Part shown: positions 54,109 through 57,030 of the stretch, in pieces
Position numbering within the stretch: the first letter of the stretch is position 1
Layout: the number at the start of each line of letters is the position of its first letter
Source: Magallana gigas
Taxonomy: Eukaryota
Assembly: GCF_963853765.1 (NCBI RefSeq)
Contig: NC_088859.1
Span: 45,942,001-46,006,000, forward strand
Length of the DNA stretch: 64,000 nt
Reading direction: 5' to 3'
Position numbers and translations under genes: made by a program
The notes under the pieces: model-generated
Database searches by the model: none
The model's input: the letters and a program-made list of their open reading frames with translations, nothing else
What the model was told of the DNA's origin: nothing

Positions 54109-54208
54109 GTTGGCCTTTTGGACCTATTCTGTGCAAAGTGACGCCATACCTCCAAGGAGTGTCCGTCTGTGCATCTGTAAACACACTGGCCGTCATAGCA
54201 GTAGACAG
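54109..54208 (+). CDS. Receptor B exon 2 ([34 protein letters not shown])
   Basis: 100-nt exon; acceptor ttataatctAG, donor GACAG|GTAAAC; same size and phase as receptor A exon 2. Confidence 0.92.
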
Positions 54209-57030
54209 GTAAACACTAAACACTCTACAATATATAGCAATAGACAGGTATACACTAAACACTCTACAATATAAAGCAGAAGACAGGTATACACTAAACA
54301 CTCTACAATATATAGCCATAGACAGGTAAACACTAAACACTCTACAATATATAGCGATAGACAGGTAAACACTAAACACTCTACAATATATAGCGATAGA
54401 CAGGTAAACACTAAACACTCTACAATATATAGCGATAGACAGGTAAACACTAAACACTCTACAATATATAGCGATAGACAGGTAAACACTAAACACTCTA
54501 CAATATATAGCCATAGACAGGTAAACACTAAACACTCTACAATATATAGCGATAGACAGGTAAACACTAAACACTCTACAATATATAGCGATAGACAGGT
54601 AAACACTAAACACTCTACAATATATAGCGATAGACAGGTATACACTAAACACTCTACAATATATAGCCATAGACATTTAAACACTAAACACTCTACAATG
54701 TATAACAGTAGACAGGTAAACACTAAACACTTTACAATATATAGCGATAGAAAGGTATATACTAAACACTCTTCAATATATAGTGATAGACAGGTATACA
54801 CTAAACACTCTACAATATATAGCCATAGACATTTAAACACTAAACACTCTACAATGTATAACAGTAGACAGGTAAACACTAAACACTTTACAATATATAG
54901 CGATAGAAAGGTATATACTAAACACTCTTCAATATATAGTGATAGACAGGTATACAATAAACACTCTACAATATATAGCGATAGACAGGTAAACACTAAA
55001 CACTCTACAATATAAAGCAATAAACAGGTAAACAATAAACACTCTACAATATAAAGCCATAGACAGTTAAACACTAAACACTCTACAATATATAGCAGTA
55101 GACAGGTATACAATAAACAATCTATAATATATAACGATAGACGGGTAAACACTAAACACTCTACATAACACAGCGATAGACAGGTAAACACTAAACATTC
55201 TACAATATATAGCAGAAGACAGGTATACACTAAACCCTCTTCAATATATAACGATAGACAGGTATACACTAAACACTGTACATAACACAGCGATAGACAG
55301 GTATACACTAACCACTTTACAATATATAGCCATAGACATTTAAACACTCTACAATGTATAGCAGTAGACAGGTAAACACTAAACACTCTACAATATAAAG
55401 CAGAAGACAGGTATACACTAAACACTCTACAATATATAGCCATAGACATTTAAACACTCTACAATGTATAGCAGTAGACAGGTAAACACTAAACACTTTA
55501 CAATATATAGCCATAGACATTTAAACACTCTACAATGTATAGCAGTAGACAGGTAAACACTAAACACTTTACAATATATAGCCATAGACATTTAAACACT
55601 CTACAATGTATAGCAGTAGACAGGTATACACTAAACACTCTACAATATATAGCCATAGACATTTAAACACTCTACAATGTATAGCAGTAGACAGGTAAAC
55701 ACTAAACACTTTACAATATATAGCCATAGACATTTAAACACTCTACAATGTATAGCAGAAGACAGGTATACACTAACCACTTTACAATATATAGCCATAG
55801 ACATTTAAACACTCTACAATGTATAGCAGTAGACAGGTAAACACTAAACACTCTACAATATATAGCGGTAGACAGGTAAACACTAAACACTCTACAATAT
55901 ATAGCGATAGACAGGTAAACACTAAACACTCTACAATATATAGCAATAAACAGGTAAACAATAAACACTCTACAATATAAAGCCATAGACAGTTAAACAC
56001 TAAACACTCTTCAATATATAACGATAGACAGGTATACACTAAACACTGTACATAACACAGCGATAGACAGGTAAACACTAAACACTTTACAATATATAGC
56101 AGTAGACATTTAAACACTCTACAATGTATAGCAGTAGACAGGTAAACACTAAACACTCTACAATATATAGCGATAGACAGGTAAACACTAAACACTCTAC
56201 ATAACACAGCGATAGGCAGGTAAACACTAAACATTCTACAATATATAGCCAGACAGTTGAACACTCAACACTCTAAAATTTATAGCGGTAGACAAGTATA
56301 CAATAAACAATCTACAATATATAATGATAGACAGGTAAACACTAAACACTCTACATAACACAGCGATAGACAGTTTAACACTAAACACTCTACAATATAT
56401 AGCGGTAGACAGGTATACACTAAACAATCTACAATATATAGCGATAGACATGTATATACCAAACACTCTGCAATATATAGCGATAGACAGGTAAACACTA
56501 AACACTTTACAATATATAGCGGTAGACAGGTTAACACTAAACACTCTACAATATATAGCGAAAGACAGGTAAACACTCTACAATATAAAGCAATAAACAG
56601 GTAAACACTCTACATAACACAGCGATAGACAGGTAAACACTAAACATTCTACAATATATAGCGATAGACTGGTAAACACTAAACACTCTACAATATATAG
56701 CAATAGACAGTTTAACACTAAATAATCTACAATAAATAGCAATAGACAGTTTAACACTAAATAATCTACAATATATAGCCATAGACAGTTAAACACTAAA
56801 CACTCACACTATATAACGGTAGACAGGTATACACTAAACACTCTACATAACACAGCTATAGACAGGTAAACACAAAAATACTTTATAATATTTAGCGGTA
56901 TACACTTAACTCTTTACAATATACGGCGGAAGACAGGTAAACACTTAACACTTTTCAAAATATAGCGATAGACAAGTAAGCACTAAACACTCTACAATAT
57001 ATAGCGATAGACCGCTGAACACTAAGCAAT
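54195..57030 (+). repeat. 39/32-bp minisatellite (~75 units; degenerate tail to ~57230) beginning inside exon 2
   Basis: Consensus ATAGCGATAGACAG|GTAAACACTAAACACTCTACAATAT (39 bp); a 32-bp variant lacks one AAACACT. Confidence 0.95.

What the first reader, a model, noticed from the sequence alone, without database searches (positions are those of the whole stretch)
54177..57030. A minisatellite built from a GPCR exon end and its splice donor: ~50 decoy 5' splice sites guarded by an immediate stop codon
Seen: the array starts inside exon 2. Each unit re-creates the last 14 exonic bases and the donor (ATAGCRRTAGACAG|GTAAAC or |GTATAC); I count about 50 AG|GT copies by eye. In the exon frame a unit reads LNTLQYIAIDR versus the real [11 protein letters not shown]. 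The octamer GTAAACAC occurs in the exon (54177) and again as the donor (54209), exactly 32 bp apart. That is the length of the short unit, and the 39-bp unit adds one AAACACT. The paralogue lacks this microhomology and has no array. Reading through the true donor gives AGG TAA (stop at 54210-54212), so use of any downstream donor truncates the receptor at R135, after TM3. Inference: slippage at the microhomology seeded the array. The gene must either select the first of many identical donors or lose transcripts to NMD, so array length could act as a heritable expression rheostat or yield a 3-TM isoform.
Basis: partly seen in the sequence, partly recalled or inferred. Interest (0 to 1): 0.85.

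Follow-up and report, generated by a model that had tools for sequence, protein, structure and literature searches.

The report
Splice-donor minisatellite in oyster receptor intron
A 2.8-kb tandem repeat in an oyster neuropeptide-receptor gene consists of about 74 copies of the end of exon 2 plus its splice donor; the gene still splices from the first donor, as in known human cases such as F7, and such arrays are common in this genome.

Summary
A 39-bp minisatellite of 74 units (54195-57014, decayed remnants to about 57215) begins 14 nt inside exon 2 of a SIFamide/NPFF-receptor-like GPCR. It repeats the donor: 51 AG|GT sites, of which 32 match the authentic CAG|GTAAAC 9-mer exactly. The unit occurs only at this locus.

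Three related oyster sequences keep the same exon end (TAGACAG|GTAA) but have a 227-263 bp intron with no array. The array is therefore a lineage-specific amplification of the exon/intron junction.

The present 32-bp units arose at least three times from different 39-bp subtypes, and the exon interior does not resemble the unit.

RNA contigs from two studies show only the 54208|59368 junction and no RNA over the array. There is no evidence for an expression rheostat.

The architecture is already known in human F7 intron 7, IFI6, CBS, LMNB2 and PDGF, where the most upstream donor wins. This is a new, large member of that kind.

Donor-containing minisatellites are strongly and donor-specifically enriched across this genome, and most of those examined start at real exon ends. 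The scan's first readers have noted at least 11 similar arrays elsewhere in the same genome. That class-level pattern is the more interesting lead.

The parts
54195..57014 (+). 39-bp minisatellite of 74 units. The first unit is the last 14 nt of exon 2 plus the first 25 nt of intron 2.
   Evidence: TRF; unit-by-unit segmentation
57015..57215 (+). Decayed remnant units at the distal edge of the array, with scattered TAGACAG(G) motifs.
   Evidence: Low-scoring units in the segmentation; sequence
54109..54208 (+). Exon 2 of the GPCR (100 nt), encoding the TM3 end ...VIAVD and the first two bases of R135.
   Evidence: Sequence; Pfam 7tm_1; RNA contigs cover it and splice from its end
54206..54214 (+). 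Authentic 5' splice site CAG|GTAAAC, cut after 54208.
   Evidence: RNA joint 54205->59365 (cut +3, GT..AG) in runs X15 and X16
54210..54212 (+). TAA, in frame if the authentic donor is read through.
   Evidence: Translation
54177..54184 (+). Exonic octamer GTAAACAC (codons V-N-T), identical to the first 8 intron bases 32 bp downstream.
   Evidence: The outgroup exons read GTAAATAC or GTGAATAC
54326..54637 (+). Youngest block: 8 units, 7 identical and 1 with a single change. All carry CAG|GTAAAC.
54638..54949 (+). Two copies of a 156-bp higher-order repeat of 4 units.
55411..55836 (+). Six copies of a 71-bp higher-order repeat (39 + 32 bp). The 32-bp members follow CAT|TT and have no donor.
48970..49273 (+). 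Exon 1 (ATG to TM2), with donor CTGG|GTAAGT.
59368..60055 (+). Exon 3 (Y136 to the stop), with acceptor tatttcag|A.
44422..44453 (+). 3' end of an upstream exon (donor CAG|GTAAGG). One RNA contig joins it directly to exon 2, skipping exon 1.
   Evidence: Loose end of X16 record 9, located in the window
21932..22031 (-). Exon 2 of the head-to-head paralogue (46% identical in exon 3), followed by a plain intron with no array.

Best explanation
The feature is a lineage-specific intronic minisatellite. It was born when a 39-bp segment straddling the exon 2/intron 2 junction of a SIFamide/NPFF-receptor-like GPCR (14 nt of exon plus 25 nt of intron) was duplicated in tandem. Unequal exchange and replication slippage then expanded it to about 74 units. 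This lengthened an intron that is about 250 bp in relatives to 5,159 bp here, together with later repeat insertions.

Every copy lies downstream of the authentic donor, so the whole array is removed as intron. The spliceosome uses the most upstream of the identical donors. The other roughly 50 AG|GT copies behave as silent pseudo-sites, as shown experimentally for the same architecture in human F7 intron 7. The array is most likely neutral or nearly so for this gene.

Shown here: the anatomy, the locus specificity, the ancestral junction and short intron in relatives, use of the first donor in RNA, absence of RNA over the array, and the stop on read-through.

Inferred: the duplication and expansion mechanism, the 5'-to-3' 'first site wins' rule by analogy with F7, and neutrality.
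For: - Array anatomy and higher-order repeats.
- The exon-identical 14-mer occurs in 8 units, and the intermediates GCAATA and GCGGTA link GCAGTA to the consensus GCGATA.
- All 46 near-matches of the unit in the genome are at this locus.
- Saccostrea cucullata, an ENA contig (82% aa identity in exon 3) and a Logan contig (74%) have the same exon end followed by GTAA. Their introns are 262, 227 and 263 bp and carry no repeat.
- The intron position is shared with the paralogue.
- The RNA joint 54208|59368 is seen in X15 and X16, from two different studies. No other exon2-exon3 joint appears, and depth is zero at 54260-57659 in all four RNA runs.
- Precedent: in F7 IVS7 the first 37-bp monomer spans the exon boundary and only the most upstream site is used. 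Pseudo-sites become active only when the upstream ones are mutated (PMC1557585).
Against: - The RNA evidence comes from assembled contigs at low depth (about 3-18). Contigs drop rare isoforms, and products of downstream donors would carry a premature stop and could be removed by NMD, so minor decoy use is not excluded.
- The raw-read run had no reads on the exons.
- Copy-number variation and an independent DNA check of array length could not be done.
- The genome-wide, donor-specific excess of such arrays hints that their birth or persistence may not be purely neutral.
- The two pseudo-sites nearest the authentic donor are both the weaker GTATAC form. The chance of that is about 4% given 15 such units among 73 pseudo-site junctions. 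This could reflect selection against competition.
Confidence: 0.72

Rival explanations
1. One reading: the array acts as a heritable expression rheostat. Downstream donors compete with the authentic one, the extended transcripts hit the TAA and are lost to NMD or give a 3-TM stub, so longer alleles lower receptor output.
For: Thirty-two pseudo-sites are identical to the authentic 9-mer, and identical over far more than 9 nt. Read-through gives an immediate stop. In human IFI6 and CBS the first two pseudo-sites are used alongside the authentic one (cited in PMC1557585). NMD would hide such products from steady-state RNA.
Against: Only the 54208|59368 joint is seen, and there is no RNA on the array. 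In F7, pseudo-sites do not compete unless the upstream sites are destroyed. The nearest two pseudo-sites here are the weaker GTATAC form. Dozens of unrelated genes in this genome carry the same kind of array, which does not fit a gene-specific regulatory design. There are no data on length polymorphism.
Confidence: 0.08
2. The array is kept, or grew, because tandem U1-binding sites just inside the intron are useful, for example by promoting splicing or transcription of a weakly expressed gene or by suppressing premature cleavage. Alternatively, a transcription- or splicing-coupled mutational process preferentially duplicates 5' splice-site junctions.
For: Donor motifs in triple tandem spacing are far more frequent than their backward controls: GACAGGTAA 127 vs 10, CAGGTAAGT 112 vs 1, AGGTAAG 1298 vs 139. 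An acceptor-like motif is not enriched (4 vs 30). Of 34 such arrays examined, 27 start at or upstream of a donor, next to GC-richer, open-frame sequence. Six of ten exon pieces ending at those donors hit Pfam families.
Against: The excess may have a neutral cause. Duplications across a donor are harmless, those across an acceptor are not, and an array anchored on a selectively constrained first copy can be re-seeded and so persist longer. Nothing tested here shows any effect on expression. Only three donor motifs and one acceptor-like motif were tried, and match counts are inflated by a few large arrays.
Confidence: 0.12
3. The repeat is not exon-derived. A pre-existing dispersed minisatellite or transposon-borne repeat with an ATAGACAGGTAA core landed next to the donor, and the match to the exon end is microhomology or chance.
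For: A 34-bp array 2.55 Mb away in a dynactin-p62 intron shares GATAGACAGGTAAACACT and about 27 of 31 aligned unit positions. Two further arrays resemble that one.
Against: The full unit is found only here. Beyond the core, the unit also carries the 7 exon-specific bases ATAGCAG, identical in 8 units. The exon end is conserved in three outgroups and so predates the array. The other core-sharing arrays are themselves built from their own genes' exon ends, so the shared core is largely the donor consensus. No flanking sequence is shared.
Confidence: 0.03
4. Assembly artefact: the array, or its length, was produced by misassembly of repeats.
For: Tandem arrays are error-prone in assemblies. Exact-sequence and homology look-ups of array ORFs found nothing in public collections, though a blank there is uninformative.
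Against: The array has the structure of a real one: distinct subtypes, 156-bp and 71-bp higher-order repeats, a homogeneous young block and a decayed distal edge. There are no Ns in it. At 2.8 kb it is well within long-read length. The same kind of array is found at dozens of loci.
Confidence: 0.02

Closest known systems
Human F7 (coagulation factor VII) intron 7 37-bp VNTR minisatellite (Borensztajn et al. 2006, PLoS Genet, PMC1557585)
   Same: The first monomer spans the exon/intron boundary, so the authentic donor is followed by pseudo-sites of identical sequence. Only the most upstream donor is used. Unit length is similar (37 vs 39 bp).
   Different: F7 has 5-9 copies and takes only 4 exonic bases. 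This array has 74 units and about 50 AG|GT copies and takes 14 exonic bases. F7's behaviour was shown by mutagenesis, whereas here there are only RNA contigs. The animal is an oyster, and polymorphism is untested.
Human IFI6 (6-16) exon 2 minisatellite providing multiple splice donors (Turri, Cuin and Porter 1995, NAR; cited in PMC1557585 and PMC4526556)
   Same: It is a large array of reiterated donors (25 pseudo-sites) starting at an exon end.
   Different: In IFI6 the two nearest pseudo-sites are constitutively used and give alternative protein isoforms. Here any downstream use gives an immediate stop, and none was seen.
Human CBS IVS13, LMNB2 and PDGF intron 4 junction-spanning minisatellites (listed in the introduction of PMC1557585)
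   Same: The architecture is the same. In LMNB2 and PDGF only the authentic donor is used.
   Different: The units are longer (81-100 bp) in LMNB2 and PDGF, and there are fewer copies (10-20).
Intron gain by tandem duplication of an AGGT-containing exonic segment (Rogers model; Hellsten et al. 2011, PMC3265369; PMC4974935)
   Same: A tandem duplication that includes AG|GT creates extra splice signals, and splicing restores the original mRNA.
   Different: No new intron was created here. The intron position is ancestral: it is shared with the paralogue and three outgroups. The duplication multiplied the donor of an existing intron.

Membership tests
Exon-junction-spanning minisatellite (F7 IVS7 / IFI6 type) | Head-to-tail array of 10-100-bp monomers lying in an intron | tested here: met
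   Period 39, 74.6 copies, at 54195-57025; 74 units segmented
Exon-junction-spanning minisatellite (F7 IVS7 / IFI6 type) | The first monomer contains the exon end and the authentic donor, so the donor sequence is reiterated in the intron | tested here: met
   The array starts 14 nt inside exon 2. There are 32 further copies of CAG|GTAAAC and 15 of CAG|GTATAC
Exon-junction-spanning minisatellite (F7 IVS7 / IFI6 type) | The most upstream donor gives the main product | tested here: met
   The joint 54208|59368 is the only exon2-exon3 joint, seen in two RNA runs from two studies, with no RNA over the array. Contigs cannot exclude rare isoforms
Exon-junction-spanning minisatellite (F7 IVS7 / IFI6 type) | Copy number is polymorphic between individuals (VNTR) | not tested
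Exon-junction-spanning minisatellite (F7 IVS7 / IFI6 type) | Pseudo-sites become active when upstream sites are inactivated | not testable with these tools
   This needs minigene mutagenesis as in PMC1557585
SIFamide / NPFF-type class A neuropeptide receptor | Rhodopsin-family 7TM domain with a DRY motif at the TM3 end | tested here: met
   Pfam 7tm_1 hits exons 1, 2 and 3 (E = 4e-12, 3e-6, 3e-30). ...IAVDR|YFAIC spans the intron
SIFamide / NPFF-type class A neuropeptide receptor | Closest relatives are named members of that receptor group | tested here: met
   The best named hits are 'neuropeptide SIFamide receptor-like' or 'NPFF receptor 2-like' across molluscs and arthropods. These names are automatic annotation, and the ligand is untested
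Dispersed satellite or transposon-borne repeat | The same unit occurs at many unrelated loci | tested here: not met
   All 46 matches of the 32-mer (up to 3 mismatches) are at this locus. Other arrays share only the donor-like core
Intron gain by tandem duplication (Rogers model) | The duplication creates an intron where the exon was previously continuous | tested here: not met
   The same intron position is present in the paralogue and in three outgroup sequences

The most novel reading that the evidence does not exclude
This oyster genome systematically turns exon-end plus 5' splice-site junctions into minisatellites, probably in hundreds of genes. It does so at donors and not at acceptors. 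Possible causes are a transcription- or splicing-coupled mutational process, selection for tandem U1-binding sites at intron starts, or long persistence of arrays that are continually re-seeded from a selectively constrained first copy. The GPCR array would then be one of the largest members of a genome-wide natural experiment in 5' splice-site choice.
Probability: 0.35. Interest if true: 0.75.

Novelty: new member of a known kind. Interest (0 to 1): 0.4.

Why it matters
For this gene alone the finding is a curiosity. It is a very large invertebrate example of a junction-spanning minisatellite, with about 50 pseudo-donors behind the real one, and it extends the F7-type 'first site wins' behaviour to a mollusc.

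Its main value is as an entry point to a class. Dozens to probably hundreds of unrelated oyster genes carry the same construction. That offers many natural replicates, with different unit lengths, donor strengths and copy numbers, for asking how the spliceosome picks one site among identical ones. It also raises the question of why donor junctions, and not acceptor junctions, become tandem arrays.

Tried and rejected
- Sister-species check inside Crassostrea/Magallana. Two protein searches returned no congeneric proteins; close relatives appear to be left out of the results. Only Saccostrea and two unnamed oyster-like contigs could be used.
- Independent DNA support for the array. Exact look-up of three array or junction ORFs found nothing. 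A homology search with the antisense junction ORF also found nothing. Both blanks are uninformative.
- Raw RNA reads (X24) had no reads on the gene's exons, so they gave no junction counts.
- The open-reading-frame test for 'exon upstream of the array' discriminates poorly: 28 of 34 arrays pass against 69 of 136 control windows. I therefore relied more on GC content and Pfam hits.
- Long ORFs on the minus strand of the array (up to 418 aa) follow mechanically from a 39-bp (13-codon) unit. No RNA covers them, so I rejected them as genes.
- I considered whether the array came from the paralogue, whose exon end ATAGCGATTGACAG is 13 of 14 identical to the array consensus. I rejected this because the orthologous outgroup exons carry GCAGTA or GCAATA, as do gene A and several units.
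- Literature searches for a genome-wide description of such arrays in oysters or other molluscs found none.
- A search of earlier scan notes near this window returned nothing.
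Full report
**What is there**

The window is part of chromosome-scale contig C7 of a 564-Mb oyster genome. 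Run labels read 'oyster metagenome' or a coded organism.

On the plus strand lies a three-exon class A GPCR:
- exon 1: 48970-49273
- exon 2: 54109-54208
- exon 3: 59368-60055

It encodes 363 aa. Pfam 7tm_1 hits all three exons. The best named relatives are 'neuropeptide SIFamide receptor-like' and 'NPFF receptor 2-like' proteins of molluscs and arthropods. Intron 2 splits the DRY motif in phase 2 (...IAVD-R|Y...). A paralogue that is 46% identical in exon 3 lies head-to-head about 19 kb upstream, with the same intron positions.

**The array**

Tandem Repeats Finder reports a single array at 54195-57025 with period 39, 74.6 copies and 81% matches. Cutting it unit by unit from the donor gives 74 units between 54209 and 57014: 60 of 39 bp, 10 of 32 bp and 4 irregular. 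About 200 bp of decayed units follow.

The first unit is the native sequence: the last 14 bases of exon 2 plus the first 25 bases of the intron. There are 51 AG|GT sites including the authentic one. By 9-mer, 33 are CAG|GTAAAC including the authentic site and 15 are CAG|GTATAC. Eighteen units have lost the GT, mostly as CAT|TT.

The array has the texture of a real, evolving minisatellite:
- a nearly uniform block at 54326-54637
- a 156-bp higher-order repeat, twice, at 54638-54949
- a 71-bp (39+32) higher-order repeat, six times, at 55411-55836
- a degenerate distal edge

**Origin**

The unit is locus-specific. All 46 genomic matches to a 32-mer of the unit (up to 3 mismatches) lie in this array, and the backward control has none.

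Three related sequences give the pre-expansion state:

| Sequence | Exon 2 end and intron start | Intron 2 length |
|---|---|---|
| Saccostrea cucullata orthologue (76% aa identity in exon 3) | ...GCAGTAGACAG\|GTAACG | 262 bp |
| ENA contig (82% aa identity in exon 3) | ...GCAATAGACAG\|GTAAGG | 227 bp |
| Logan contig (74% aa identity in exon 3) | ...GCAGTAGACAG\|GTAATT | 263 bp |

None has a repeat there. The junction TAGACAG|GTAA is therefore ancestral and constrained, since it encodes V/I-D-R. The array is a later amplification of it.

The exon-identical 14-mer ATAGCAGTAGACAG survives in 8 units. The single-step intermediates GCAATA and GCGGTA connect it to the now commonest GCGATA.

**The microhomology seeding idea does not hold**

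The 32-bp units fall into three subtypes:
- eight of one type, seven in or beside the 71-bp higher-order repeat and one at 56110
- one at 56569
- one at 56601

Each is 0-1 mismatch from a different 39-bp subtype after removal of one AAACACT. The present short units are therefore independent 7-bp deletions within a two-copy subrepeat, not relics of a founder.

The exon's 32 bases differ from the main 32-bp unit at 9 positions, and 8 of these lie in the central 10 nt. No trace remains of exon bases 54185-54194 in the unit.

The outgroup exons read GTAAATAC or GTGAATAC, so the octamer is one or two synonymous changes away from the ancestral codons. An ancient 32-bp founder cannot be excluded, but nothing supports it.

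**Splicing**

I laid three RNA contig sets and one raw-read run on 54060-60055. Two runs from different studies (X15, X16) contain contigs that join 54208 to 59368 (GT..AG). No other exon2-exon3 joint is reported. No run has any depth between 54260 and 57659.

The raw-read run had no reads on the exons, so it says nothing either way. Contigs cannot show rare isoforms, and transcripts spliced from a downstream donor would carry TAA directly after R135 and might be degraded. Minor decoy use remains possible but is unsupported.

The two pseudo-sites closest to the real donor (54247|54248 and 54286|54287) are both the weaker GTATAC form. By chance that would happen about 4% of the time, so it is at most a weak hint of selection against competition.

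The 'guarding' stop is generic. Any phase-2 intron starting GTAA after AG reads AGG TAA.

**Comparison with what is known**

This architecture is described in the literature. Borensztajn et al. (PLoS Genet 2006, PMC1557585) study the human F7 intron 7 VNTR. Its first 37-bp monomer is the last 4 bp of exon 7 plus 33 bp of intron, with 5-9 copies. Only the most upstream donor is used. The pseudo-sites are functional, but each is activated only when those upstream of it are mutated. This holds even when the pseudo-sites are strengthened to a consensus value of 91. The authors call this 5'-to-3' oriented scanning.

Their introduction lists further human cases:
- IFI6/6-16: 25 pseudo-sites, of which the first two are also used
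- CBS IVS13
- LMNB2
- PDGF intron 4

The oyster array meets the structural criteria of this kind and, as far as contigs can show, the behavioural one. It differs in scale (74 units), in the length of the exon part (14 nt) and in host. I therefore class it as a new member of a known kind. It is not an instance of intron gain by tandem duplication (PMC3265369), because the intron is ancestral.

**The wider pattern, found while testing locus specificity**

BLAST of the unit against the genome gave one weak outside hit: a 34-bp array 2.55 Mb away that shares GATAGACAGGTAAACACT. Following that lead turned up many minisatellites containing donor-like cores. Motifs required three times at minisatellite spacing gave these counts against the backward control:

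| Motif | Matches | Backward control |
|---|---|---|
| GACAGGTAA | 127 | 10 |
| CAGGTAAGT | 112 | 1 |
| AGGTAAG | 1298 | 139 |
| TTTTTCAGG (acceptor-like) | 4 | 30 |

I fetched 36 loci, of which 34 could be scored. Of those, 27 start at or upstream of their first donor. Mean GC is 0.46 in the 90 nt upstream against 0.34 downstream. Twenty-eight have at least 24 open codons running into the donor, although this ORF test is weak because 69 of 136 control windows also pass.

Exon pieces ending exactly at the first donor hit Pfam families in 6 of 10 cases tried: cytochrome c heme lyase, dynein heavy chain N2, sodium:dicarboxylate symporter, GNT-I, DNase II and gamma-glutamyltranspeptidase. These genes are unrelated, and each amplifies its own exon end plus donor.

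The scan's own first-stage notes list at least 11 further cases in this genome, including OvoA, TASP1, ERCC6L, CTU1 and MRPL38. Those notes are unchecked, and I had already reached the same conclusion independently.

The GPCR array is thus ordinary for this genome, but the class is striking. I found no paper describing it at genome scale.

A neutral account is available. Duplications across a donor are harmless because the first site is used. Duplications across an acceptor are harmful. An array whose first copy is held constant by selection can persist. A mutational bias or selection for tandem U1 sites is not excluded.

**Unexplained**

The dynactin-p62 and trehalase arrays (exons confirmed by Pfam) abut their genes' donors at intron positions +4 and +8. 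They carry the GACAGGTAA core on the antisense strand. The dynactin array matches this window's unit at about 27 of 31 aligned positions, which is more than the shared donor consensus explains.

**Limits**

- No DNA reads were laid on the array, so its exact length and its polymorphism are unverified.
- No congeneric species could be examined.
- The expression evidence is qualitative.

Noticed in passing
Genome-wide. Examples: L018 (C4:51.53 Mb), L025 (C4:11.63 Mb), L027 (C4:4.755 Mb), L031 (C7:0.35 Mb), L032 (C7:11.60 Mb), L017 (C2:50.885 Mb), L037, L041, L047, L051: Minisatellites whose unit is an exon 3' end plus the 5' splice site plus the first intron bases occur in dozens of unrelated genes. 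Triple-motif counts against the backward control are GACAGGTAA 127/10, CAGGTAAGT 112/1 and AGGTAAG 1298/139, while acceptor-like TTTTTCAGG gives 4/30. Six of ten upstream exon pieces hit Pfam families.
   Followed up: partly
L013:5338-5792 (C7:48.552 Mb) and L016:2956-4117 (C2:59.030 Mb): Two arrays (34 bp and 27 bp) start at intron positions +4 and +8 of dynactin-p62 and trehalase exons but carry the GACAGGTAA core on the antisense strand. The first matches this window's unit at about 27 of 31 aligned positions. Their origin is unexplained; inverted copying of a near-palindromic junction is one possibility.
   Followed up: partly
window 44422-44453 joined to 54109: One RNA contig (X16, 614 nt, depth about 5) joins an upstream exon ending CAG|GTAAGG at 44453 directly to exon 2 and then to exon 3. 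It skips exon 1, which holds the ATG and TM1-2. No upstream ATG of that exon is in the receptor frame, so this looks like a non-productive isoform or an isoform with an alternative 5' UTR.
   Followed up: partly
window 59366 (run X27): One contig carries 28 letters (beginning GTAAAAGAATTATG) directly before exon 3. They match neither exon 2 nor the reference intron end and are absent from the window. They may be an allele, another upstream exon outside the window, or a chimeric contig.
   Followed up: partly
window 57735-59246: The distal half of intron 2 is covered by RNA reads and contigs on both strands, at 95-99% identity, with loose ends at 57735, 58040 and 59246. These are evidently transcripts of dispersed repeats elsewhere. 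A G-rich tract lies at 58168-58205 and a 7-bp repeat at 59160-59226.
   Followed up: no
window 19507-29962 (minus strand) and 48970-60055 (plus strand): Two SIFamide-receptor-like paralogues sit head-to-head about 19 kb apart and are 46% identical in exon 3. Saccostrea also has two such genes (P0002, P0076), so the duplication is old.
   Followed up: partly
window 54193-56796, minus strand: Long stop-free ORFs (up to 418 aa) run through the array. They follow from the 13-codon unit and have no RNA support.
   Followed up: yes
window about 10200-10550: A run of 296 N (assembly gap or masked stretch).
   Followed up: no
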